From NCBI RefSeq assembly GCF_000189555.1, contig NC_017276.1: DNA of 64,000 bases. The stretch is one strand, 5' to 3'. Source of the stretch: Saccharolobus islandicus REY15A. Lineage in GTDB: Archaea > Thermoproteota > Thermoprotei_A > Sulfolobales > Sulfolobaceae. Of the stretch, positions 10,064 through 58,584 are shown in pieces. The number at the start of each line of letters is the position of its first letter. The first letter of the stretch is position 1. The position numbers and the translations under genes were made by a program. The notes below the pieces were generated by a model. It was given only the letters and a program-made list of their open reading frames with translations, made no database searches and was not told where the DNA came from.

Positions 10064-11023
10064 TGCTTTGTTGATATCTTCAATTTGTTCATAGGAATGG
10101 CATGATATAATGAGAATTTATTATTTATTTCAACGTTATTCTAAAGCTCACAACCCCAATAGCTGGAGCCCTACCGACTACAGAATTGGCTAAGTGAACT
10201 ATCCGCGCGTAAGCCCAAAACCTTGGCCTCAACCACTTTACCTACAAAACTTGTGCTAACATACTCCCCAAAAGTAAGCTTTACCGCAGAGAATAAGGAC
10301 TTAACCCCACTACCTAATACCTAACTCCCAACGATTATAACTCGATTTCTTGAACTCCATTACAGCCTTACGCCTAGCAAGATTACCGCTTTTGGTAGAA
10401 GCCTAGGAGGAGCCTCGACCCCGGTCTTGTAAGCCTCATTAGAATCGTAAACCTTATCTCCATAAAACTTCTTACCCTTATCTTGGAGATCCTTGATTAT
10501 CTTAACTGCAGTCTCAACCTCGTTACTAGTTATCTCAGCGTTTATTACGTTGGATTCGTTATTATCTATTACTATCTCGATCTTGAGGAATTTTGAATCT
10601 CTGGTTTTACTACCCATTTTGTTATTGTCCTTCCTTATTTATTCCCGTTGCATCTGCAATTACTTCTAGTTCATCACTTGTTTGTGGGAATGTTTTTTTA
10701 GTCTTCCCATGTGGGATAATTGGGGCTTGTGGGGATGATCTTTAACTGTTCTAGGGCTCTCAATACTCCTTCTATATAAGGTAGGGATGCTAGGAAGTCG
10801 TTGAACTCTTTTTGGGGTTTATACTTTGTCCTAGCGTATCTATTCTCCTCTATTAGCTAACCAGTGTTCAAATAGGTAGAGGGGGGAACATTGGTTTGTA
10901 CCTAGTTATGATGTTCTTGTTGTATTTGCTCCAGTCCCTCTTGTGCTTCACTTTTCCCATAGGTAATACTTAACTGAATAATCTGGAAACTTTTTGTACA
11001 ATTCTGAAGTAGTCCGCAAAGCA
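10064..11023 (-). mobile_element. Degenerate IS5-family element (ISC1058-like), 960 bp, with 19-bp imperfect TIRs and a 9-bp target-site duplication
   Basis: TIRs are tgctttgttgatatcttca (10064-10082) and the reverse complement of 11005-11023 (tgctttgcggactacttca), 14/19 identical. The direct repeat cctctttgt occurs at 10055-10063 and 11024-11032. Confidence 0.88.
10148..10960 (-). pseudogene. Frameshifted IS5-family DDE transposase
   Basis: Fragments in different frames: MGKVKHKRDWSKYNKNIITRY; ELEVIADATG; KTRDSKFLKIEI...KFYGDKVYD; HLANSVVGRAPA. Multiple stops and frameshifts. Confidence 0.88.
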
Positions 11024-32294: not shown

Positions 32295-35204
32295 TCATTT
32301 TCTTTTATTTCTTACTCTTAGGAGTACTGTGACAATCACTATAATTATTATTATTATCACTATAATTATTATTATGCCAGCGGGCGATTTAAAGAACTGC
32401 TCATAGAATGGAGGAGATATTGTTACATAGAATGTATCAGACTGTTCAAATGGGAATAACGAACCAGTTTGATTCCATATCAAAGCTATTGCCAATGGGT
32501 AAGTTCCGGAAGATGCTCCACTGCTCACATCGACTACAAAAGTTACATTTATTGTTTGTCCAGGAGCAATATCTCCAGCGAATACCTCAGATGCCGTCAG
32601 TGCTTGTAATGGGTTTGATGAACTTACATGAGGATATATTAGATTAGAAGTACCTAGCCTAACTATAACGTTCTTAGCTGTGGAATTTCCATTGTTTTTA
32701 AGAGTTATTGTGATTGGTACGTTACTATCTCCTGCACTTAGTGAAGGGTAAGATACTCCTACTACGATCAGATTAGCCTTGGGATATATTTGTAATGGGT
32801 ATTGATAAGTTTCTTTCCCACCATCATAGGTAATGGTAACGTTTATAATATAGGTTTTAGGTATAGTATCATTTGGAACATTTATGAGGAATGTGGCATT
32901 AACTGGTACTCCTACTGGTAGTGCTCCTAAATGTAGTGGATTAGAAGATATAACTTGGAATGGTGATAGAATGCTCACATTGGCGTTTTCTGCTATGCCA
33001 CCTCCAAAGTTTGTTAAAATTACCAATAATCTAACATCGTAATAGCTAGGAAATACTTGAGGTGGAATTGTTATCAAATTTACTGAAATATTTGGTGAAT
33101 AAATTGTTATTGGGATCGTTATTGTGGTTTTGTGATTGAAGTAATACAGAGTTGCTGGTATGTAGTATACTCCTGGTGTCGCATTTGGAAACACACTTAC
33201 AGTTACCGTAGCATAATTTTCTTGCCCAGCTGGCACAATACCAATTTGTGCATTAGTCTGATGGAAGATTAATGGATACTCTACGTTCTGAAAAACTAAG
33301 GTAGCATTGAGAATATTAACGTCACCAGTGTTTTTGAGTAAAATTGTTAAAGGTACATCGTTCTCACCTGAAGAAACTGTTATTGGGGACGTTACTCCTC
33401 CCCACAAACTTTGAGCTTGTATTGTAATATATCCTAGGATATCAACCGTTATCATTATGTTTTCTTTAAATCCACCATAAGCCACTAAGGTTGCTGGTAT
33501 GTAGTATACTCCTGGTGTCGCATTTGGAAACACGTTAGCTGTAACTGTTACGTAATTATAGCTACCTGCGGGAACGAAACCAACGGAGGCGTTTTGCTGG
33601 AGGAATTGTATCGGATAATGAGATTGTAATATTAGGCTCACATTTGTCATTAGGTTTTCTCCAAGATTCTTTATTACTATCGTTAACGGTACGTTATTCT
33701 CTCCTGGCGCTACTAGTAACGGATTAGATAAAGAACCCCATACACCCTCTACCGAAACTTGATTCAATGACTGTATATATATTGGAACTTTTACATATTG
33801 TATCACACCATCGTAGTACATTACTTTTGCAGTTATGTAGTAAACACCAGTATTTGTTACATTGGGATAAACATTTGCAAGTACTGTTACTGGTATAGGA
33901 TAGCCTACGGGAATGTTTCCTATTGTTACATTGTTCTGCAGGAACTCTACTGGATATTGTGATTGTAAGAACAAGGTTGCATTCGTTATAGAAACTATTC
34001 CAGTGTTTTGTAGTATTATTGTTAGTGGTATGTTGTTTTCTCCTGGTCCTACTACCATTGGGTTTGATGTTGTTCCCCATACTGAGGATGCAGAGAAATT
34101 AACATAGCCTAAAATGTAAACTGGCATTTCAAAAGTTTGCATGAATCCTCCATCATATGCAACTAACGTTATCGGTACGTAATATACTCCAGGTGTTACG
34201 TTCTTATAGACGTTTGCTACTACTGTTACGTAATTATATCCTCCAGCTGGTACGAAACCTATCATTGTATAATTTTGGAGGAATTGTATCGGATAATGAG
34301 ATTGTAATATTAACATGACATTGGATAATAGGTTCTCGCCAAGGTTCTTTACATAAATAGTGAGGGGAAGTAATGTTTCCCCAGGAGCAGCAACTATTGG
34401 ATCAGATGGTGTACCCCACGCATCTTCTAATGATACTTGATTAGATGAGCCAATATCAATGGGTACTAATACTGTTGTAGTTGCATTATGATAGTATATT
34501 ATATTTAACCTGATATAATACAAACCTTGAGTTACGTTAGGATACACTGAAGCCATTACAGTTGCTTCTCCATAATATCCTGCCGGTATTGCAGAAATTG
34601 TGGCATTATTTTGCAGGAATTTAACTGGAAACTGTGAGTTTAGTTCTAATGTTATATTAGTAACTAATGAATTACCTAAGTTTTGTAGTATTATTGTTAG
34701 TGGTATGTTGTTTTCTCCTGGTCCTACTACCATTGGGTTTGATGTTGTTCCCCATACTGAGGATGCAGAGAAATTAACATAGCCAGCTATTACTACTGGT
34801 ACTAAAACGTCATAAGTTGCCTGGGTACCCGAGGTAGTGACACCTTGGACTATTACTACATCAGTGTATGTACCAGTCTTAGCAGCACTGGCTATATCAA
34901 ATAGGTAAGTAACATTTACTGTTTGTCCTTGATTCCACAAGGGAATATGCGTAAGTTCAGTTCCATTATTATAGGGGTAAAGGTAAAACGGATAAGTATC
35001 TGCAGGAATTATTGTTACATCAGTTAAGGTTTGGCCTAGGTTAATCAGATGGAAGGTTATTGGTACCTCGATTTCGCCAGGTGTTATTAGTTCGTTGCTT
35101 GTTGCATATCCTTGAATCGGCGTGGATTGTGATGATATTGGTAGTGCTAAATATGTTAGAGGAGATAATATTACAAAAAATAATATTATTAAACTCCTTC
35201 TCAT
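32295..35204 (-). CDS. Large membrane-anchored surface protein with tandem Ig-like repeats (COG1361/S-layer-domain type)
   Basis: Signal peptide (likely start MRRSL at 35204, GGTGA upstream), repeated ~110-aa units (WG..S.P..V.PGE.N.PLTI.L.N.G...PG.YYIP), and a C-terminal poly-Ile TM segment with a basic tail. Confidence 0.85.
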   Translation of the reverse strand: MRRSLIILFFVILSPLTYLALPISSQSTPIQGYATSNELITPGEIEVPITFHLINLGQTLTDVTIIPADTYPFYLYPYNNGTELTHIPLWNQGQTVNVTYLFDIASAAKTGTYTDVVIVQGVTTSGTQATYDVLVPVVIAGYVNFSASSVWGTTSNPMVVGPGENNIPLTIILQNLGNSLVTNITLELNSQFPVKFLQNNATISAIPAGYYGEATVMASVYPNVTQGLYYIRLNIIYYHNATTTVLVPIDIGSSNQVSLEDAWGTPSDPIVAAPGETLLPLTIYVKNLGENLLSNVMLILQSHYPIQFLQNYTMIGFVPAGGYNYVTVVANVYKNVTPGVYYVPITLVAYDGGFMQTFEMPVYILGYVNFSASSVWGTTSNPMVVGPGENNIPLTIILQNTGIVSITNATLFLQSQYPVEFLQNNVTIGNIPVGYPIPVTVLANVYPNVTNTGVYYITAKVMYYDGVIQYVKVPIYIQSLNQVSVEGVWGSLSNPLLVAPGENNVPLTIVIKNLGENLMTNVSLILQSHYPIQFLQQNASVGFVPAGSYNYVTVTANVFPNATPGVYYIPATLVAYGGFKENIMITVDILGYITIQAQSLWGGVTSPITVSSGENDVPLTILLKNTGDVNILNATLVFQNVEYPLIFHQTNAQIGIVPAGQENYATVTVSVFPNATPGVYYIPATLYYFNHKTTITIPITIYSPNISVNLITIPPQVFPSYYDVRLLVILTNFGGGIAENANVSILSPFQVISSNPLHLGALPVGVPVNATFLINVPNDTIPKTYIINVTITYDGGKETYQYPLQIYPKANLIVVGVSYPSLSAGDSNVPITITLKNNGNSTAKNVIVRLGTSNLIYPHVSSSNPLQALTASEVFAGDIAPGQTINVTFVVDVSSGASSGTYPLAIALIWNQTGSLFPFEQSDTFYVTISPPFYEQFFKSPAGIIIIIVIIIIIIVIVTVLLRVRNKRK
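33151..34312. repeat. Two further perfect intragenic direct repeats: 44 bp (33151-33194 / 33490-33533) and 37 bp (33598-33634 / 34276-34312)
   Basis: Direct comparison of the sequence lines. Confidence 0.88.
34005..34784. repeat. Perfect 105-bp direct repeat within the surface-protein gene (34005-34109 and 34680-34784)
   Basis: The two copies are nucleotide-identical by direct comparison; they encode GYVNFSASSVWGTTSNPMVVGPGENNIPLTIILQN. Confidence 0.92.
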
Positions 35205-35342
35205 CAAAATCACCTTCAAAAAGATATATCTAAATGCTTTTAAGTGTTTTCCTTCTTTTGTTCTTAATATCACGAAGAATGATCATAGATGCTATATTAC
35301 CACTTAAAGAGAAATTATGAATTTAAAAAATTAGTAGTGTAT

Positions 35343-36398
35343 TTATAGAATGTATAATTCTTTTTGCAACGTATTTAGTACTTTCCCATATCCTTTTTTT
35401 ACTACTACTTCGTCTTCTATTCTTATACCAAATTTGCTTGGTAGGTAAATCCCAGGTTCTATAGTAAACACCATATTCTGCTCTATTACATCATCGTTAT
35501 CTGGAGAAATGTATGGATCTTCATGAACGTCGATTCCTATACCGTGTCCAGTCCTATGAATAAAGTAAACCCCATATCCCTTATCAGTTATAACTTTTCT
35601 AGCAATATCGTCAATCTCCTTAGCCCTAATACCCTCTCTTACGTGTTTTTCAGCCTTTTCATTCGCACTTTTGACGATTTCTACAATTTCTAAAGCTAAA
35701 GTGTCATTAGGTCTACCTAATGTAAACACTCTTGTAGTATCTGTAGAATATCCCTCATACTTTATTCCGTAATCTATAACTATTACCTCACCTCGTTTTA
35801 TCTTTTTATCACTGCATCTCAAGTGGGGCATAGAAGAGTTAGGACCAGAGGTCACTATTGGATCAAATGAGATATAACCAGCTTCTCCAATCAAGAAGCT
35901 CTTTAGTTTTCTCTCTATTTCGCACTCCGTTATATTTTCCTTTATATTCGGTACAAATTCTAAAAGAAGTTCTTCTGCTTTTTTAACACCTTTCTCCATT
36001 TTTTCTATTTCCTCATCATCCTTTACTTGTCTAAGCTTTCGCAATATAGCTGAAGCTTTACCTATTCTTCTAGGCCTGAACCTATTTAGTATTTCTATAG
36101 TGAATAGTGAGAAGGTCGTATCGTCAATTAAAATATTGGAATTCTCCTTTAAATTTAGTTTGGAGTATGGATCCTCCCCATCTCTATAAACGATAAGTGG
36201 TAATTGCTTTAATTGCTGCTCATAGAGTTTTGGAACGAGCATGAAATAGTCGTCTTTAGTGACGAAAAGTAAAAGCGGCCTTTCCATCTGTTCCTCTGAA
36301 AATCCTACTAAATAGAACATGTTGCTAGTAGTTCCAATTATCAGATAATCTGTATCAGTCTTCTCCAATTCCTTTTGTAATCTCTGTATTCGATCCAT
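35343..36398 (-). CDS. pepQ: Xaa-Pro peptidase (M24B prolidase/aminopeptidase P)
   Basis: IDYG...DTTR, HRTGHGIG..VHE, TIEPGIY and GIRIED motifs. Confidence 0.92.
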   Translation of the reverse strand: MDRIQRLQKELEKTDTDYLIIGTTSNMFYLVGFSEEQMERPLLLFVTKDDYFMLVPKLYEQQLKQLPLIVYRDGEDPYSKLNLKENSNILIDDTTFSLFTIEILNRFRPRRIGKASAILRKLRQVKDDEEIEKMEKGVKKAEELLLEFVPNIKENITECEIERKLKSFLIGEAGYISFDPIVTSGPNSSMPHLRCSDKKIKRGEVIVIDYGIKYEGYSTDTTRVFTLGRPNDTLALEIVEIVKSANEKAEKHVREGIRAKEIDDIARKVITDKGYGVYFIHRTGHGIGIDVHEDPYISPDNDDVIEQNMVFTIEPGIYLPSKFGIRIEDEVVVKKGYGKVLNTLQKELYIL

Positions 36399-36439
36399 GT
36401 TCTAAACTTAAATAGACGTGTTATAAAAAGATAGGCTAA

Positions 36440-37423
36440 ATGATAACTATTGTTTATGACGATATATATAGGTATCACGCTCCAAAAAAGTATCACGTAG
36501 AGAACCCTAGTAGGATAGACAAGGCATTATCTGCAATTAATCAACTTGAGGTTAAGTTTGAGAAACCAGTTAGGGTTGATGATCCTCAAATAGTACATTC
36601 AGAAGATTATATTAAATTAGTTGAAAAGCACTCTAAATTAGAAGAGAACTTAGATGCGGATACTTATACTAACAAGTACACCTACGAATCCGCACTTTAT
36701 GCGATGGGTGGTGCATTAAAGGCTTTTGAGACTAACGGATTTGCATTAGTGAGACCTCCTGGTCATCACGTTGGAGTCAATGGAAGAGCTTTAGGAGCTC
36801 CTACTTTAGGTTTCTGTATTTTCAACAGCGTAGCATATCCTATTAAGAGGTATAAGTTAAAAAGAGTGGCTATTATTGACTTTGATGTACATTATGGTAA
36901 TGGAACGCAAGAAATCTTTTATGATGATCCAGATATTCTGCATATTGATGTACATCAAGATCCTAGGACCATCTATCCGGGTACCGGCTTTGTGGATATG
37001 ATAGGTGGGAAAGACGCTGAGGGGACTAAGATCAACTTACTGATACCTCCTTTAGGTAGTGATGATTTATATGAGGAATTAATTCCAATTATTCAAGCTA
37101 TTCTAGACGATTTCAAGCCAGTGGTTGTTGCGTACTCTGCTGGTTTTGACTCTTATGTTGGTGATGGTCTGGCTTCAGTTAACGCTACTGAGTATACGTT
37201 TTATAATTTTGGTATGATTAGCAATAAATTTACTAGAAAATATGCAGTTTTAGAGGGAGGTTATAATAAAGGTTTAGTAAAAGGTTTAAAAGCATTTTTA
37301 GAAGGATTTGCAAACTTGAAAATAGAATATAAGAAATATAAATCAAGTGACACAGTTAAGTCTAGGTTTATGAATTATCTAAGTGAAGAGAAAAATATTT
37401 TGAGGAATTATTGGAGTATCTAG
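36440..37423 (+). CDS. Histone deacetylase family protein (second paralogue)
   Basis: RPPGHH, GFCIFN, DFDVHYGNGTQ, SAGFD and LEGGY motifs. Confidence 0.92.
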   Translation: MITIVYDDIYRYHAPKKYHVENPSRIDKALSAINQLEVKFEKPVRVDDPQIVHSEDYIKLVEKHSKLEENLDADTYTNKYTYESALYAMGGALKAFETNGFALVRPPGHHVGVNGRALGAPTLGFCIFNSVAYPIKRYKLKRVAIIDFDVHYGNGTQEIFYDDPDILHIDVHQDPRTIYPGTGFVDMIGGKDAEGTKINLLIPPLGSDDLYEELIPIIQAILDDFKPVVVAYSAGFDSYVGDGLASVNATEYTFYNFGMISNKFTRKYAVLEGGYNKGLVKGLKAFLEGFANLKIEYKKYKSSDTVKSRFMNYLSEEKNILRNYWSI

Positions 37424-37425
37424 TA

Positions 37426-38274
37426 TTAGCAAGTGTAGTAGCATTTTAGTGCTATATTATAGGCAGCATTATAATCTCTATCTGCTTTATATCCACAAGC
37501 TGGACATACAAATAGCGAACCTAGTATTTCACCTTTCTTATATCCACATTTTGCACACACTCTTGATGTATTGTACGGGTCTATTTTTCTATATCTAATA
37601 CCTCTCTTTCGTATCTCGTTTTCTAGCATATTCTGTAAAGCTCGTAATCCTTTACCCGTTTTCGTCTCAAAATATTCCAAATTCTCCATTGCGACTATTT
37701 TTGGTTCCAATTCTTCAATAAAGCTTACAGCTTCGTAAAGGATTTTTCTAGCATTAGTCTTCATTTCCTCTAACTTAATAATTCCTTGATTTTCACTTAA
37801 GAAATTTGCAAACTGCTCCATAAGTTTAGGTTCGTTAAAGAATCTCACTTTCCATGGTTTGTTATCCTTTAACGCAACAATTGTTATTAGGTGACGTAAA
37901 CCTAGGTCTACTCCAACTATACTAGGGTTCTCTTGATAAGCTAAATACACTCTTACATCGGTATCCGTATACTCCACTATGGCGTATAACGGTGGCCTAG
38001 AATCACTTTTTATTTTAACTAAAGTATTATACTCTTTTATTTTTATCATATCGTTGTTAACTAATTCTATCTGAAGGGGGCCATCTCTAGGAATTCCTCC
38101 AGTAAGTATTGAAGTTACAATAGATTTGGGTAAGGTAGGAGGTGGATCTACCTTTTCCTTAATCCCTTTCTTTCTTAATGCGTCAACATAGAGCTTGTAA
38201 TATACAATTTCCTTTTGAATATCCTTTAATTTACCATAATCTATAACTTTTGCTTCTATGAGACTCTCCTTCAT
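37426..38274 (-). CDS. Compact stand-alone TnpB/Cas12-like RuvC nuclease with a zinc ribbon (282 aa)
   Basis: RuvC-I VGVDLG, RuvC-II AMENL, Zn finger CAKC...CPAC and RuvC-III ADRDYNAA. No tnpA or IS ends seen nearby. Confidence 0.85.
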   Translation of the reverse strand: MKESLIEAKVIDYGKLKDIQKEIVYYKLYVDALRKKGIKEKVDPPPTLPKSIVTSILTGGIPRDGPLQIELVNNDMIKIKEYNTLVKIKSDSRPPLYAIVEYTDTDVRVYLAYQENPSIVGVDLGLRHLITIVALKDNKPWKVRFFNEPKLMEQFANFLSENQGIIKLEEMKTNARKILYEAVSFIEELEPKIVAMENLEYFETKTGKGLRALQNMLENEIRKRGIRYRKIDPYNTSRVCAKCGYKKGEILGSLFVCPACGYKADRDYNAAYNIALKCYYTC

Positions 38275-38315
38275 AAATTAATATTATAATCTTCATGCTT
38301 AAGAATTTATACTTC

Positions 38316-39038
38316 TCAAAGATGCATAATACTTCCCATCATAAGTTCTTCTGCATCTACTCCTAGATAGTATTTTATTGTAGACGAAAATACGTATCTT
38401 TCATTGTCTGTATAGAGCTTATAATACTCCTCATTTGTCTCTTTTGATAATCTATTCTTATTATAATAATATCCAATTAAAAGAGATGGCCCTTCTTTCT
38501 TATTGTAATAAATTAAACCGGAATTTAAGCTCGTAGAGTAATCCTTTAGTTTATCTAGAGTATTTACGTACGCCTCGAATGGAGACATGTTGTTTTCTAT
38601 CAATGTCTTTATCTCTTCCAGAATTAGATAACTATCAGTAAATGGCCTATTATTATCCTTAAAGCTCGTTCTACTAACTGAACCATTATGAGCAAAGTAG
38701 AGATCATAAATGTTTGCCCTTACGTAATAGGGATGAGCATGAGATACTCCAGTAAGAAATTTTCTACCGGCTTTTCTTGCATGAATAATTCCAATTATCT
38801 CTTCTCCCTTGGCAATATCAATTAAATAATTAAAGTTAGGATCTTCAAATATCGGATCTTCTGATCTATAATAAATTACCTTCCACTTATCATTTTTCTT
38901 GAGAAACACACTTAGACCCCATCCATCAGGATGGCTACCATATTTAGAGAAAATATCATTTCTACTCGCCTTTATTAATGCGTTAACATATTTTTTTGAA
39001 ATTTCGGCCTTAGTGTGAAAAGCCAGAATTCTACACAT
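38316..39038 (-). CDS. Class II glutamine amidotransferase (YafJ/EgtC-like)
   Basis: N-terminal MCR, HPDGWG, HAR, HAHP, HNG and TDS motifs. Confidence 0.88.
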   Translation of the reverse strand: MCRILAFHTKAEISKKYVNALIKASRNDIFSKYGSHPDGWGLSVFLKKNDKWKVIYYRSEDPIFEDPNFNYLIDIAKGEEIIGIIHARKAGRKFLTGVSHAHPYYVRANIYDLYFAHNGSVSRTSFKDNNRPFTDSYLILEEIKTLIENNMSPFEAYVNTLDKLKDYSTSLNSGLIYYNKKEGPSLLIGYYYNKNRLSKETNEEYYKLYTDNERYVFSSTIKYYLGVDAEELMMGSIMHL

Positions 39039-39717
39039 TTAATGACAACCCATCAGAAGCAATAATTATTTTATTATTAGCGAAGCTTATTATTTTTTCT
39101 TCAATTTCAACTGGAATATGAGTGGCAATAATTCTCTTATTACTAAACAATTCAAATATTTGTTTGATTGAAGTATGTCCCCAAGCACTACAGTCATTCA
39201 TACAAGTCGTTTCATGAATAATCAAATCTACATCTTTTACGTTTTCTAGAATGGTATTACAAGGCTCTTTAGTGTCGCCAGTATATAATACCTTGGTATT
39301 ACCATCACTTATAATATAACTAACAGCATATATCGAGTGACAAGCTTGAATCGAATATATTTCCATATCGTCAATTTTACCTCTGGGTAAATCGCTTTCG
39401 TATACTTTAGCTGAAATATTATTTCCTACTCTAATGTATGAGTTTAGCACTTCTAAGAAACCTTTAGTAGAGTAGATTTCCAAATCCGGAATTTGTCTTA
39501 TTTTCCTTTGGACTAAATAATCGAAAACTCCATTAAAATGATCGACGTGCAAATGAGTAATAAAGAGGGCCTTTGGATGTGTACTCATATCTTCCAGTCT
39601 TAACTCAGCCCCAGGTCCTAAATCAAGAAGTACTTTATCGTTGATTAGTATACTGGATTTAACCCTTTTTAACCCTAAGCTAGAACCAGCACCTGTTCCA
39701 ATAAAAGTTATTTTCAC
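39031..39717 (-). CDS. Metallo-beta-lactamase fold hydrolase (RNase Z/ElaC-like)
   Basis: FIGTGAG, LLDLGPG, THLHVDHFNG, YTGDT, IHE and H motifs. Confidence 0.88.
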   Translation of the reverse strand: MKITFIGTGAGSSLGLKRVKSSILINDKVLLDLGPGAELRLEDMSTHPKALFITHLHVDHFNGVFDYLVQRKIRQIPDLEIYSTKGFLEVLNSYIRVGNNISAKVYESDLPRGKIDDMEIYSIQACHSIYAVSYIISDGNTKVLYTGDTKEPCNTILENVKDVDLIIHETTCMNDCSAWGHTSIKQIFELFSNKRIIATHIPVEIEEKIISFANNKIIIASDGLSLNV

Positions 39718-39807
39718 ATGTCGTCACGCTCCGTTATATCTACAAAATCCAAATCACAAAAACTTGTAGTGCAATGTTCCTCCTTCCCTTTTCTATTACT
39801 TTTTCTT

Positions 39808-40689
39808 TTACTCGTTATCGATTTCCTCAAGGAATTTTCTCACCTCATCTAATTTTGGTCCTAAAGCTCCTATCTTAGTTACGGAAAGTGCTGCAACCTT
39901 ATTTGCATATTCAACTGCGGTCTCAAGATCGAATCCCTTTTCCAAATAGACGGAAAGTGCTGCGTTAAATACATCTCCAGCTCCCGTTTCATCTATAACG
40001 TTTACTTTAGGAGATGGTATAAGTACCTTTTTTCCATCCCTAGTTGCTAATAAAGCTCCTCTTTCCCCTAACGTAACTATAACTGCCTTTTTTACTTTCT
40101 TTAGTAATACATTTAAGCCATACTCAAAATCATCAGTATTTACTAACTCTTTAAACTCTATTTCATTAGGTGTTATAATATCTACTAATGACAAGATTTC
40201 AGTATCTTTAAGGTTTGCTGGCGCGGGATTAAGTATTTTTATTCCGTTAAACTCCTTTGCAGCCTTTTTAACTACGTTTTCTCTTATTTCCAATTGTATT
40301 AACAATATATCGCCCTCAAGACTATTATTTAAATCGTCTTCTGACAAGTTGTAGTTAGCGCCTCTGTTTACGACAATGATATTTCTTCCTTTCTTGTCAA
40401 CGAATATATATGCAGTGCCAGTGTTTATACCATTCTTTATCTTAACTTTAGATACGTCAATATTTTCCGATTTCCAGAATTCAATTGCATTCGTTCCATG
40501 CTTATCATCTCCCACTGCAGCGATTATTTTAACATGACTTCCTAATCTTGAAGCTGATACTGCTTGGTTTGAGCCCTTCCCTCCGTGAGTTATGTATACC
40601 TCATCAGCTATTACCGTTTCTCCAATTTCCGGTATTTTACTTACTCTCAATATTACATCAACGTTATAACTTCCTACTACAGCTATCAA
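39808..40689 (-). CDS. rbsK: Ribokinase (PfkB family)
   Basis: GGKGSNQA, NPAP, TPNE, TLGERG and DETGAGDVF motifs. Confidence 0.9.
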   Translation of the reverse strand: MIAVVGSYNVDVILRVSKIPEIGETVIADEVYITHGGKGSNQAVSASRLGSHVKIIAAVGDDKHGTNAIEFWKSENIDVSKVKIKNGINTGTAYIFVDKKGRNIIVVNRGANYNLSEDDLNNSLEGDILLIQLEIRENVVKKAAKEFNGIKILNPAPANLKDTEILSLVDIITPNEIEFKELVNTDDFEYGLNVLLKKVKKAVIVTLGERGALLATRDGKKVLIPSPKVNVIDETGAGDVFNAALSVYLEKGFDLETAVEYANKVAALSVTKIGALGPKLDEVRKFLEEIDNE

Positions 40690-41919: not shown

Positions 41920-42528
41920 TTAGGTTAGTTTGGCTGGACAAATGACGGAAAATATACAATATTTGCACTCCCAATTGAATCTAGGCGAGTTCCTTAACGT
42001 TACTGTATCCTCTGCAAGTCTTACTATTGTTGCTTCATCTAAAGGTTCATTTATTTCATATTCCGCAATCCTATCTGGAGTTATGTAGATTAATATCCCC
42101 TTTTTTGTATTAAATAACCATAAATATATTTGTAGTTGCATCTTGTGGTGAATTAAAGGTAGTCCTTTATCGCTCCTAGAAGTTTTTATCTCAATTATTA
42201 TACTTTCACCGCTACTATTTTTGATTATTGCATCAGCCTTTCCCTTAATTTTGTAAACTCTACCTTCAACTTGAATCTCTCTCTGAGTCTCAACTTCAGC
42301 TTCTGCAGTAAAGTTTTTCTTTAATAAATTTTCAAGGCCAAGATGTAATATGTCTCCTAAAATAGCTGAAGGTGCATAAACTTGAGAAATTGCGAGCTCT
42401 TTATATTCGCTCTCATATTTTACTTTTCTGGGGCATTTTACCAAATCTGTTACATATATAGTATTCTCTTCCTTTACATGGCTTAACTGTTCTTCTAATT
42501 TCTTTTTTAGTAGAAACTCAGTTATCAT
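41920..42528 (-). CDS. cas4: Solo Cas4 family Fe-S exonuclease (SSO0001 orthologue), not CRISPR-linked
   Basis: Four-Cys cluster ligands (KCPR...CKYCIFSVIC), RecB motifs GKAD, EIK and QLQIY. Near-identical to SSO0001 as I recall it. Confidence 0.92.
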   Translation of the reverse strand: MITEFLLKKKLEEQLSHVKEENTIYVTDLVKCPRKVKYESEYKELAISQVYAPSAILGDILHLGLENLLKKNFTAEAEVETQREIQVEGRVYKIKGKADAIIKNSSGESIIIEIKTSRSDKGLPLIHHKMQLQIYLWLFNTKKGILIYITPDRIAEYEINEPLDEATIVRLAEDTVTLRNSPRFNWECKYCIFSVICPAKLT

Positions 42529-57480: not shown

Positions 57481-58584
57481 ATGTTTGATCCTGCTTCGTT
57501 CGTTAAGGAAATAGGACCACAGCTGAAACAGAAGGTAGGTAATGAGAGAGTTTTAGCTGCAGTAAGTGGTGGTGTAGATAGTACTACAGCTGCAGTTCTG
57601 GCTTATAATTTGTTGGGTAACAAAGTAATTCCCGTTTTAATAGATACTGGATTTTTAAGGAAAAATGAAGCTGAGAAAATTAAAGCTTATTTAAGTAATG
57701 TCTTACCTAACCTTATCGTAGTGGACGAGAGGGAGACATTCACTTCTGAGATCGAGGGAATGGAAGAAGCTGAAGCGAAAAGGAAGAAATTTAGAGAACT
57801 GTTCTATTCTTCTATTTCATCATTAATGAGAAAGTTCAATGCAAAGTATTTAATGCAAGGAACCATAGCAGCCGATTGGGTAGAAACACAAGGCGGAATA
57901 AAGACACAGCACAATGTCTTAGTTCAAATAGGTATAGATACAGAGAAAGAATGGGGCTTTACATTAATTGAGCCGTTGGCAGACCTATATAAGAATGAGG
58001 TCAGAGAACTAGCTAGATATCTTAAATTACCTAAGGAAATTTCAGAGAGGCAGCCGTTCCCTGGTCCTGGCCTCCTAGTAAGGACAATTGGAAAACTGAC
58101 TAGGGAGAAGTTAGAAGTAGTAAGAGAAGCTAATGACATAGTTGAAAAATATTTAGATCCCTTTAATTATTCACAATACTTTGCGGTTTCTTTTGAATCT
58201 GATGGTAATTTTGTAATTTTGGACGGTATTGATGCATTTTTATATAAGGCAAGGGCAACTGGTGTTAAGGGTGACGTTAGGGCTTATGGCAATATAGCAA
58301 AAGTTGAGTGTAGTGATATTAATGCAGCGAAAAGCTTTGTCGATACTCTGGTTAAATATGATATTACCCACGTATTATGTTCCTTGGATGAAAGGAGTAA
58401 TGGGAAATACAGCATTGCAATAAGGGCAGTAATTACGGAAGACTTCATGACTGCAGATTATGCTAGAATACCTAAAGAAGTCCTAGAGAAAATTAGTTCT
58501 GAAATATTACAAAAAATACCTAATGTAAAGGAAGTACTTTATGATGTTACTTCTAAACCACCTGCAACTATCGAATTTGAGTGA
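57481..58584 (+). CDS. guaAB: GMP synthase subunit B (ATP pyrophosphatase)
   Basis: [29 protein letters not shown] and KPPATIEFE motifs. Confidence 0.93.

What the first reader, a model, noticed from the sequence alone, without database searches (positions are those of the whole stretch)
37426..38274. Miniature, apparently domesticated TnpB/Cas12-like nuclease with an intact RuvC triad but no transposon and no room for a cis omegaRNA
Seen: 282 aa; a WED-like beta-rich N-terminus with only a very short helical (REC-like) insert; catalytic D (GVDLG), E (MENL) and D (DRDYNAA) plus the 4-Cys Zn ribbon all present. There is no tnpA or resolvase, and I saw no terminal hairpins or target duplication. 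Its stop lies 2 nt from the convergent stop of the deacetylase gene, so any 3' RNA would run antisense into that CDS. A TATA-like CTTAAG about 24-29 nt upstream of the ATG suggests its own leaderless promoter. Known: IS200/IS605 TnpB (typically around 400 aa) uses an omegaRNA from the element right end, and described exapted forms such as TldR are nuclease-dead. Inference: this is a host-captured, catalytically competent mini-TnpB that uses a trans-encoded guide, a guide antisense to the neighbouring gene, or no guide (structure-specific repair nuclease). It is the best candidate here for an undescribed system.
Basis: partly seen in the sequence, partly recalled or inferred. Interest (0 to 1): 0.8.

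Follow-up and report, generated by a model that had tools for sequence, protein, structure and literature searches.

The report
Host-fixed mini TnpB nuclease (GATase-TnpB)
This is a real, very small relative of the transposon nuclease TnpB that has stopped moving and been inherited as an ordinary chromosomal gene in all Sulfolobus-like archaea; the clade was already described in 2023 as "GATase-TnpB", and what it does is still untested.

Summary
The 282-aa ORF at 37426-38274(-) is real. All the reported motifs are present: GVDLG D123, MENL E197, DRDYNAA D267 and four Cys.

An AlphaFold model (pLDDT 87) matches TnpB/Cas12f structures. It has a wedge domain, an RNase H-like RuvC domain and a zinc ribbon. 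Only a two-helix remnant (~48 aa) stands in place of the REC domain.

Orthologues of 272-285 aa occur once per genome across Sulfolobaceae. In 21 of the 23 intact orthologous loci the gene sits directly downstream of a class-II glutamine-amidotransferase-like (GATase-like) gene. Its tree agrees with that neighbour's tree, and its dN/dS of 0.08 equals that of housekeeping neighbours. The catalytic triad and the Cys are invariant in the 22-sequence alignment. There is no TnpA, no terminal repeat and no second copy.

Downstream DNA differs between genera. Third-codon positions are unconstrained along the whole CDS, and no stable or covarying RNA fold or G+C island exists. A cis omegaRNA, even one embedded in the CDS, is therefore very unlikely.

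The system is not undescribed, however: Altae-Tran et al. 2023 (PNAS) named this clade "GATase-TnpB" and reached the same tentative conclusion of a possibly RNA-independent nuclease. Function remains experimentally open.

The parts
37426..38274 (-). mini-TnpB CDS (282 aa + stop). Equivalent tags inferred from gene order: SSO0008, Saci_0269, Msed_0188, STK_23250.
   Evidence: ORF. PF07282 and guided_TnpB hits. Orthologues. dN/dS 0.082.
38239..38274 (-). aa 1-12: first wedge (WED) strand.
   Evidence: AF2 strand 3-12. It corresponds to WED residues 1-12 of ISDra2 TnpB.
38095..38238 (-). aa 13-60: vestigial REC insert, two helices (16-35 and 50-57) joined by a PPP-containing linker.
   Evidence: The ISDra2 REC is 104 aa with four helices. 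P44/P45 are near-invariant or invariant.
37930..38094 (-). aa 61-115: rest of the WED beta-barrel.
   Evidence: AF2 strands 63-114.
37570..37929 (-). aa 116-235: RuvC (RNase H fold), carrying D123 (37906-37908) and E197 (37684-37686).
   Evidence: Invariant D123, E197, G121, G125 and R127 in 22 orthologues. The profile aligns positions 111-270 to ISDra2 TnpB 183-368.
37489..37569 (-). aa 236-262: zinc-ribbon TNB domain, CxxC...CxxC.
   Evidence: C240, C243, C257 and C260 are invariant. PF07282 covers aa 212-274.
37429..37488 (-). aa 263-282: RuvC-III helix with R266-D267 (D267 = 37474-37476). No C-terminal domain follows.
   Evidence: R266, D267, N269, A270 and N273 are invariant. AF2 helix 266-281.
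38298..38311 (-). Box-A/TATA-like elements: TATAAAT at -37..-31 and TTCTTAAG ending at -24. Probable own promoter giving a leaderless or near-leaderless mRNA.
   Evidence: Sequence. Invariant T,T,A columns of a TTTAAA-like box at the same distance from the ATG in 9 Sulfolobaceae species. Promoter function is inferred.
37391..37395 (-). T5 run 31-35 nt after the stop codon, inside the 3' end of the convergent deacetylase gene. Possible archaeal terminator.
   Evidence: Sequence. Inference only, from the known use of oligo-T terminators in archaea.
38316..39038 (-). Class-II GATase-like Ntn-hydrolase gene (240 aa, N-terminal MCR...). The nearly invariant upstream partner that gives the clade its name.
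   Evidence: PF13230 at E 4.6e-4. Immediately upstream on the same strand in 21 of the 23 intact orthologous loci examined. Its tree is congruent with the TnpB tree.
39031..39717 (-). MBL-fold hydrolase (228 aa, RNase Z-like / Apyc1-like). It overlaps the GATase-like gene by 8 nt and is usually, but not always, part of the cluster.
   Evidence: Absent from the cluster in Sulfuracidifex.
36440..37423 (+). Convergent histone-deacetylase-family gene. Context only, not a conserved partner.
   Evidence: PF00850 at E 5.6e-60. Absent at this position in Metallosphaera, A. brierleyi, Sulfuracidifex and S. acidocaldarius.

Best explanation
The ORF is the Saccharolobus (Sulfolobus) islandicus member of the 'GATase-TnpB' clade. 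This is a TnpB derivative that lost its transposon in, or before, the last common ancestor of the Sulfolobaceae. It has been inherited vertically since then as a single-copy chromosomal gene directly downstream of a class-II GATase-like Ntn-hydrolase gene.

Shown here:
- It keeps the wedge domain, a complete RuvC (D-E-D) active site and the zinc ribbon.
- REC is reduced to two helices and there is no C-terminal domain.
- It evolves under the same strong purifying selection as its housekeeping neighbours.
- No omegaRNA is encoded downstream of the CDS or within it.

Inferred:
- It is made from its own box-A promoter, and in some lineages is co-translated with the upstream gene.
- It acts as a metal-dependent RuvC endonuclease for the host cell.
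- It most likely recognises its nucleic-acid substrate through protein surfaces (WED, zinc ribbon, possibly a partner protein) rather than through a cis-encoded guide RNA. I put this last step at about 45-50%.

The substrate and the cellular process are unknown.
For: Family and fold:
- PF07282 at E 3.6e-20, and guided_TnpB at E 3.2e-20 over aa 78-276.
- PDB sequence hits to Cas12f and TnpB.
- AF2 pLDDT 87.4. Foldseek top hits are ISFba1 TnpB, AsCas12f and Un1Cas12f at E ~1e-11.

Active site:
- D123, E197, R266-D267 and the four Cys are invariant in 22 orthologues spanning 39-91% identity.

Fixation:
- One locus per genome in 15 Sulfolobales assemblies, plus 8 further genomes including S. acidocaldarius.
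- The order ...PfkB-MBL-GATase-miniTnpB is kept.
- Only 7 clusters at 50% identity exist among 1.84 billion proteins. Scores then fall from 265 to 82 bits.
- No member was found in viral contigs.

Selection:
- dN/dS is 0.082 (dN 0.040, dS 0.488), against 0.04-0.11 for six neighbours. It is <=0.16 in the other measurable pairs.

Vertical descent:
- The TnpB and GATase trees share all well-supported clades, and pairwise identities correlate at r = 0.79.

No cis RNA:
- The downstream neighbour differs between genera.
- Synonymous differences are not depleted at the 3' end.
- Third-position entropy is 0.78-0.90 of its maximum along the whole CDS, with no fixed site, in 21 orthologues.
- The MFE z-score is +0.69. 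The RNAalifold covariation term is -0.51 kcal/mol.
- G+C is 24-47%, with no island. Rfam finds nothing.

Literature:
- Same description, and the suggestion of RNA-independent nuclease action, in PMC10691335.
Against: - No experiment bears on activity, substrate or RNA binding.
- The two surfaces that hold the omegaRNA scaffold in ISDra2 TnpB (WED and RuvC) are retained. IscB/IsrB show that a nuclease without REC can still be RNA-guided. RNA guidance by a trans-encoded RNA is therefore not excluded.
- Only 64 kb of this genome could be searched for such an RNA.
- The NCBIfam guided_TnpB score (72.7) is below the curated cutoff of 100.
- Gene adjacency to the GATase-like gene does not prove a functional link. 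In two deep lineages (L010, L014) the nuclease is intact without that neighbour.
Confidence: 0.6

Rival explanations
1. It is still an RNA-guided nuclease (or RNA-guided DNA binder), but its guide is encoded elsewhere in the genome. The source could be a dedicated trans gene or omegaRNAs borrowed from resident IS200/IS605 elements. The RNA would substitute for the missing REC domain, as in IscB/IsrB.
For: - WED and RuvC, the scaffold-binding surfaces of TnpB, are retained.
- IscB/IsrB lack REC and rely on a bulky omegaRNA.
- Sulfolobus genomes carry many mobile TnpBs.
- The family is closest in sequence to the Cas12f/TnpB lineages that are RNA-guided.
Against: - There is no structured or G+C-rich RNA candidate near the gene, and no Rfam family anywhere in the 64-kb window.
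- The REC residues that read the TAM and line the heteroduplex channel in TnpB have no counterpart.
- Resident IS content varies between strains, whereas this gene is universal.
- No precedent is known to me for a TnpB relative separated from its guide gene. This point rests on my own knowledge.
Confidence: 0.25
2. It is the toxin or effector of a small toxin-antitoxin-like or defence module. The partner would be the GATase-like protein, or the 87-89 aa protein found between the two genes in some genera.
For: - Tight two- or three-gene cluster with overlapping or 4-nt-coupled reading frames in some lineages (L013 and L004).
- Active-site-intact exapted TnpBs next to small proteins have been proposed as toxins (the RHH/MazE-TnpB clade).
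- The upstream MBL protein hits the Apyc1 cyclic-nucleotide phosphodiesterase family.
Against: - The gene is universal, single-copy and inherited vertically, and it evolves at a housekeeping-like rate in a stable core region. Defence and TA modules are typically patchy and mobile.
- There are no PADLOC hits for the partners.
- The small protein is absent from most genera, including this one.
- The Cys2 nucleophile of the GATase-like protein is conserved, which suggests an enzyme rather than an antitoxin.
Confidence: 0.08
3. It is a nucleic-acid-binding regulator, with catalysis incidental or lost in practice, in the manner of TldR or Cas12m.
For: Most characterised exapted TnpBs are regulators.
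Against: - All three catalytic carboxylates, the flanking R266 and the zinc ligands are invariant over the whole family, unlike TldR.
- There is no 3' region for a guide.
Confidence: 0.05
4. It is a decaying remnant of an IS200/IS605 element, N-terminally shortened by chance.
For: Databases annotate it as 'transposase IS605 OrfB'.
Against: - Length is constant at 272-285 aa with an intact frame in more than 20 genomes, dN/dS is 0.08, and position is syntenic.
- Only one MAG copy is frameshifted (L015).
Confidence: 0.02

Closest known systems
GATase-TnpB clade of Sulfolobaceae (Altae-Tran et al. 2023, PNAS; PMC10691335)
   Same: Everything that defines it matches: Sulfolobaceae host, ~280 aa, wedge + catalytically intact RuvC, a GATase gene next door, no room for a downstream RNA gene, non-mobile.
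   Different: Nothing; the window gene is a member. Points added here:
- Quantified selection.
- Congruent trees.
- Evidence against an omegaRNA hidden in the CDS, which that paper left open.
- A two-helix REC remnant.
- A conserved box-A promoter.
- A lineage-restricted 87-89 aa ORF inside the cluster.
Canonical IS200/IS605 TnpB (e.g. ISDra2 TnpB, 408 aa; PDB 8exa/8h1j)
   Same: - WED-RuvC-TNB core, D-E-D triad and CxxC...CxxC zinc ribbon.
- The profile aligns positions 111-270 to residues 183-368.
- Foldseek E 2.9e-10.
   Different: - REC is ~48 aa with two helices, against 104 aa with four.
- There is no C-terminal domain.
- There are no TnpA, LE/RE ends, omegaRNA or copy-number variation.
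- The gene is chromosomally fixed.
Cas12f / Cas14 (type V-F effectors)
   Same: The best sequence and structure matches fall here: CnCas12f1 8hr5 at E 5e-15, NCBIfam Cas12f2 at E 1.4e-16, and AsCas12f by Foldseek at E ~2e-11.
   Different: - About half the size.
- No CRISPR array, tracrRNA or cas genes are nearby.
- The match is limited to the RuvC/TNB half.
TldR (TnpB-like nuclease-dead repressors)
   Same: Immobilised, host-recruited TnpB derivatives.
   Different: TldRs have lost catalytic residues and keep a 3' guide RNA. This protein keeps the triad and has no guide locus.
Halobacterial ~220-aa non-mobile TnpBs (RuvC domain only)
   Same: Very short, non-mobile and lineage-fixed archaeal TnpB derivatives with an apparently active RuvC. 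They are thought unlikely to bind a guide.
   Different: Those lack the wedge domain. This family keeps it. No relationship between the two was tested here.

Membership tests
GATase-TnpB clade (PMC10691335) | Host in Sulfolobaceae | tested here: met
   99% identical to S. islandicus proteins. All close homologues come from Sulfolobaceae.
GATase-TnpB clade (PMC10691335) | Unusually small, ~280 aa, wedge + RuvC only | tested here: met
   282 aa; orthologues are 272-285 aa. The AF2 model has WED, RuvC and TNB, plus a two-helix REC remnant.
GATase-TnpB clade (PMC10691335) | Adjacent glutamine-amidotransferase gene | tested here: met
   The GATase_4-like gene at 38316-39038(-) ends 41 nt upstream. 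The same arrangement is found in 21 of the 23 intact orthologous loci examined.
GATase-TnpB clade (PMC10691335) | Catalytically intact RuvC | tested here: met
   D123, E197 and D267 are invariant. Activity itself was not tested.
GATase-TnpB clade (PMC10691335) | No room for a downstream RNA gene; non-mobile | tested here: met
   2 nt to the convergent stop codon. Single syntenic copy.
TnpB (RNA-guided nuclease of IS200/IS605/IS607) | RuvC D-E-D triad and CxxC...CxxC TNB zinc ribbon | tested here: met
   PF07282 scores 72.3 bits against a cutoff of 26.3.
TnpB (RNA-guided nuclease of IS200/IS605/IS607) | Full WED-REC-RuvC-TNB architecture scoring above curated family thresholds | tested here: not met
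   guided_TnpB scores 72.7, below the cutoff of 100. PF01385 OrfB_IS605 scores 13.6, below 30.5. REC is reduced to ~48 aa.
TnpB (RNA-guided nuclease of IS200/IS605/IS607) | Resides in a transposon (TnpA or serine recombinase, LE/RE hairpin ends, multiple copies) | tested here: not met
   The neighbours are housekeeping genes. There are no IS-type repeats. One copy per genome at a fixed position.
TnpB (RNA-guided nuclease of IS200/IS605/IS607) | omegaRNA encoded at or overlapping the 3' end of the gene | tested here: not met
   - The downstream context is variable.
- There is no synonymous-site constraint.
- The MFE z-score is +0.69.
- There is no covariation.
- There is no G+C island.
- There is no Rfam hit.
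TnpB (RNA-guided nuclease of IS200/IS605/IS607) | Binds a guide RNA and cleaves TAM-flanked complementary DNA | not testable with these tools
   Needs RIP-seq and cleavage assays.
TldR (nuclease-dead TnpB-derived repressor) | Loss of RuvC catalytic residues | tested here: not met
   The triad is invariant.
Cas12f (type V-F CRISPR effector) | Adjacent CRISPR array, tracrRNA and adaptation genes | tested here: not met
   There are no direct-repeat arrays in 36000-40000, and the neighbours are metabolic genes. The Cas4-like gene at 41920-42528 is the stand-alone SSO0001-type. That identification comes from gene order and my own recollection.

The most novel reading that the evidence does not exclude
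A TnpB descendant has reverted to a protein-only enzyme. It would be a guide-free, wedge + RuvC nuclease with a core cellular role (DNA repair or recombination, or RNA processing) in all Sulfolobaceae. It may work as a complex with the co-inherited Ntn-hydrolase-like protein and, ancestrally, an 87-89 aa beta-rich protein. This would be the first RNA-independent cellular function shown for the TnpB/Cas12 lineage.
Probability: 0.4. Interest if true: 0.7.

Novelty: already known. Interest (0 to 1): 0.35.

Why it matters
TnpB is the ancestor of all Cas12 enzymes. Every characterised descendant (Cas12 types, Fanzor, TldR, dCas12f-sigma) still depends on a guide RNA.

This clade is fixed for the whole history of a family of archaea. 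It keeps a perfect active site, yet has no place for a guide and almost no REC domain. It is the clearest available test of whether the scaffold can work without RNA, or with a guide encoded elsewhere.

At ~280 aa it is also among the smallest natural WED + RuvC nucleases, and it is thermostable by origin. Its hosts, S. islandicus and S. acidocaldarius, are genetically tractable, so the question can be tested directly.

The idea itself is not new. It was published in 2023 and awaits experiments.

Tried and rejected
1. Essentiality from the S. islandicus Tn-seq study (PMC6249222). The supplementary tables held here are cut off before this gene. I recovered only the locus-tag frame (MBL = SSO0006/ST2327/Saci_0271).

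2. Expression data from the S. islandicus cell-cycle transcriptome (PMC12216602). No supplements are held. The text names three other TnpBs whose tags I could not map to this gene.

3. Literature searches by inferred locus tags (SSO0008, Saci_0269, Msed_0188, STK_23250). Nothing relevant came up.

4. Rfam searches of the locus at a permissive threshold and of the whole window at gathering threshold. No hits.

5. Viral contigs. Only distant ordinary TnpBs were found.

6. PADLOC. Only generic Cas12 models hit the nuclease, and nothing hit the partners.

7. The 87-89 aa ORF. It has no Pfam or NCBIfam family. The AF2 model is confident, but the best PDB match has E 0.32 (AFV1 ORF157, Whirly), which I do not treat as evidence.

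8. The idea of a guide antisense to the deacetylase gene. Rejected because that gene is not a conserved neighbour.

9. The weak tblastn hit at 57502-57921. It lies in a PP-loop (GMP-synthase-like) gene and is chance.

10. A phylogeny against mobile TnpBs. I did not build it. The bit-score gap (265 to 82) already shows a long isolated stem, and the published tree exists.

11. Co-folding of the nuclease with the GATase-like protein.
Full report
**1. Observation**

The window holds an ATG-initiated ORF at 37426..38274 on the minus strand, 282 aa long. Read against the DNA, it carries:
- IVGVDLGLRH, with D123 = GAC at 37908-37906.
- AMENLEYF, with E197 = GAG at 37686-37684.
- KADRDYNAAYN, with D267 = GAT at 37476-37474.
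- Two CxxC pairs (C240/C243 and C257/C260).

The convergent deacetylase ORF ends at 37423, so 2 nt separate the two stop codons. CTTAAG lies 24-29 nt upstream of the ATG, and a better TATAAAT lies at -31 to -37.

**2. What the protein is**

- Pfam gives PF07282 (Cas12f1-like TNB) at E 3.6e-20. PF01385 (OrfB_IS605) scores far below threshold.
- NCBIfam guided_TnpB aligns aa 78-276 to profile positions 157-388 of 389 at E 3.2e-20. Its 72.7 bits are below the curated cutoff of 100.
- PDB sequence hits are Cas12f and TnpB chains, and they cover only the C-terminal part. With the family profile, positions 111-270 align to ISDra2 TnpB residues 183-368.
- An AlphaFold2 model built on 22 orthologues is confident (pLDDT 87.4, pTM 0.68).
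- Foldseek puts ISFba1 TnpB, AsCas12f, Un1Cas12f and ISDra2 TnpB on top at E 1e-11 to 3e-10. Viral TnpB/Fanzor-like proteins top the BFVD list.

The model was compared with the published ISDra2 domain limits: WED 1-12 and 117-176, REC 13-116, RuvC 185-326 and 360-375, TNB 327-359, CTD 376-408 (PMC10097598). The small protein divides as follows:
- WED strand 3-12.
- A two-helix insert (16-35 and 50-57, ~48 aa), where TnpB has a 104-aa four-helix REC.
- WED strands 63-114.
- RuvC 116-235 and 263-282.
- Zinc ribbon 236-262.
- No C-terminal domain.

**3. Distribution, synteny, selection**

*Distribution*
- A search of 5.8 billion proteins found one orthologue of 273-285 aa per Sulfolobales species at 41-99% identity. 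Genera include Saccharolobus, Sulfolobus, Sulfuracidifex, Sulfurisphaera, Acidianus, Metallosphaera and Stygiolobus.
- Scores then collapse to E 1e-8 for ordinary TnpBs.
- A profile search of 1.84 billion cluster representatives found only 7 clusters above 195 bits. The full-length ones score 265-445 bits, and the next hit scores 82 bits.
- In a 22-sequence alignment, D123, E197, R266-D267 and the four Cys are invariant.

*Synteny*
- Genome scans gave one locus per assembly.
- In 21 of the 23 intact orthologous loci examined, the gene sits directly downstream, on the same strand, of a class-II GATase-like gene. This includes S. acidocaldarius, reached through the GATase neighbour. The cluster is usually Cas4-like - ThiD - PfkB - MBL - GATase - miniTnpB.
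- The downstream neighbour is not conserved:

| Lineage | Downstream neighbour |
|---|---|
| Saccharolobus, Sulfurisphaera, Stygiolobus | convergent deacetylase |
| Metallosphaera, A. brierleyi | co-directional M24 peptidase |
| S. acidocaldarius | convergent metallophosphoesterase |
| Sulfuracidifex | large surface protein |

- Two deep lineages (L010, L014) have an intact nuclease in another context.

*Selection and descent*
- Against S. solfataricus, dN/dS is 0.082 (dN 0.040, dS 0.488). The range is 0.04-0.11 for ThiD, PfkB, MBL, GATase, HDAC and M24. The other measurable pairs give <=0.16.
- Maximum-likelihood trees of the nuclease and of the GATase-like protein share every well-supported clade. 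Pairwise identities correlate at r = 0.79.
- The nearest outgroup homologues of the GATase-like protein (34-37% identity) have no TnpB beside them.
- No member occurs in viral contigs.
- The window has no second copy, no TnpA and no IS-type repeats.

All of them fail. The gene is domesticated and ancient.

**4. Is there a guide RNA in cis?**

Canonical omegaRNAs overlap the 3' end of tnpB and extend downstream. Here the evidence runs against one:
- The 3' flank is another gene's coding sequence, and a different gene in different genera.
- Synonymous differences between S. islandicus and S. solfataricus are not depleted at the 3' end: 16 of 57 fall in the last 50 codons.
- Across 21 orthologues, third-position entropy at conserved amino acids is 0.78-0.90 of its maximum in every 25-codon bin. 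It is highest at the 3' end, and no site is fixed.
- The last 250 nt plus 100 nt of flank fold no better than shuffles, with z = +0.69.
- An RNAalifold consensus over 7 species has -11.35 kcal/mol in 318 columns, with a covariation term of -0.51.
- G+C stays at 24-47% throughout the cluster, in a 34% G+C genome where structured RNAs stand out.
- Rfam finds nothing.
- A T5 run 31-35 nt past the stop would end the transcript early (sequence reading; inference).

I conclude that no conserved RNA scaffold is encoded at this locus, inside the CDS or beside it. A trans-encoded RNA cannot be excluded from 64 kb.

**5. Expression signals**

In nine Sulfolobaceae species, a TTTAAA-like box A sits at the same distance (about -24 to -31) from the ATG, with invariant T, T and A columns. 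This fits a leaderless mRNA from the gene's own promoter. In L013 and L004 the start overlaps the upstream stop by 4 nt, which suggests co-translation.

**6. Partners**

- The GATase-like protein begins MCR[FIL] in nearly all genomes where its start could be read. The Cys2 nucleophile of Ntn amidotransferases is therefore kept.
- The MBL protein upstream resembles RNase Z weakly and hits the Apyc1 family. It is missing from the cluster in Sulfuracidifex.
- In Acidianus, Aramenus, Sulfuracidifex and deep Sulfolobaceae MAGs, a conserved 87-89 aa ORF lies between the GATase and the nuclease.
- That ORF is absent from this window. It has no known family, folds confidently into four strands plus two helices, and has no significant structural match.

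**7. Comparison with what is known**

Altae-Tran et al. 2023 (PNAS, PMC10691335) describe exactly this clade under the heading 'GATase-TnpB'. Their description: Sulfolobaceae, next to a GATase gene, not enough room for a downstream RNA gene (though an omegaRNA might overlap the CDS), and unusually small (~280 aa). They add that it consists of wedge and active RuvC only. [quoted passage not shown]

No other paper in the library uses the name, and none mentions the gene by its inferred locus tags. The finding is therefore already known at the descriptive level and experimentally open.

It is not any of the following:
- A TldR, because the triad is intact.
- A Cas12f, because there is no array.
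- A functional transposon TnpB, because there is no element and no omegaRNA.

**8. Mechanism and verdict**

*Shown:* a fixed, selected, single-copy WED + RuvC + zinc-ribbon protein with an invariant active site and no cis guide.

*Inferred:* it is an active metal-dependent endonuclease serving the host.
- About 45-50%: it works without guide RNA, possibly with the Ntn-hydrolase-like partner.
- About 25%: it uses a trans-encoded RNA.
- Small probabilities: a toxin or defence role, or a purely regulatory role.
- A decaying IS remnant is excluded.

*Scores:*
- Novelty: already known.
- Interest: 0.35. It is a good experimental target, but the observation and its interpretation are published.
- The increments here are the quantitative selection and congruence tests, the evidence against a CDS-embedded omegaRNA, the REC remnant, the conserved promoter box and the extra small ORF.

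Noticed in passing
L055:3711-3980, L054:3718-3981, L004:5711-5980, L005:5671-5937, L002:5718-5981, L011:725-988, L012:2140-2409 (absent from the window): A conserved 87-89 aa ORF sits between the GATase-like gene and the mini-TnpB in Acidianus, Aramenus, Sulfuracidifex and deep Sulfolobaceae MAGs. It is restricted to these lineages and has no Pfam or NCBIfam family. The AF2 model (pLDDT 89.9) has four strands plus two helices, with no significant PDB match. I did not see it mentioned in the GATase-TnpB section of the 2023 description. It is possibly an ancestral third component lost in Saccharolobus.
   Followed up: yes
L051:4850-5386 (Saccharolobus caldissimus): A 537-nt insert lies exactly between the mini-TnpB stop and the deacetylase stop. 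It has a 29-nt inverted repeat near its start (L051 4937-4965) and a G+C-rich core that folds strongly (-99 kcal/mol over 320 nt). There is no Rfam hit and no similarity to the window or to other loci. It may be a MITE or an unknown structured RNA.
   Followed up: partly
window 39031-39717 (-): The MBL-fold protein that overlaps the GATase-like gene by 8 nt hits the Apyc1 (anti-Pycsar cyclic-nucleotide phosphodiesterase) Pfam family and, weakly, RNase Z. A host cyclic-nucleotide or RNA-end hydrolase is thus co-clustered with the nuclease in most genera.
   Followed up: partly
window 41920-42528 (-): A stand-alone Cas4-like PD-(D/E)XK nuclease (202 aa) lies at the head of the conserved cluster, with no CRISPR array nearby. 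By gene order it is the SSO0001 orthologue.
   Followed up: no
window ~10120-10460: A C-rich, G+C-rich (0.53-0.54) stretch without a long ORF is 76% identical to an IS5-family transposase gene on S. islandicus plasmid pYN01 (NC_012624.1). It is a degraded IS5 remnant, not an RNA gene. There is no Rfam hit.
   Followed up: yes
L015:6001-6833; L014:6001-6816: Two orthologues look damaged. A MAG copy is split by a frameshift (153 + 101 aa). The Sulfolobales HS-7 copy has no canonical start codon before residue ~30 (the ORF runs from 6073), and it is also not next to a GATase gene. These could be assembly errors or real decay.
   Followed up: partly
window 32295-35273 (-): A very large (992 aa) Asn/Thr-rich, internally repetitive secreted protein with a C-terminal transmembrane anchor (faint NPCBM_assoc hits in orthologues). 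It is a conserved flank of the cluster in Saccharolobus, and a related gene lies directly downstream of the nuclease in Sulfuracidifex.
   Followed up: no
L003:5714-6000, L008:5846-6000, L053:3853-4000: In Metallosphaera, a 148-287 nt non-coding gap replaces the 88-aa ORF between the GATase gene and the nuclease. No remnant of the ORF is detectable by tblastn. The content of the gap is unexplained.
   Followed up: partly
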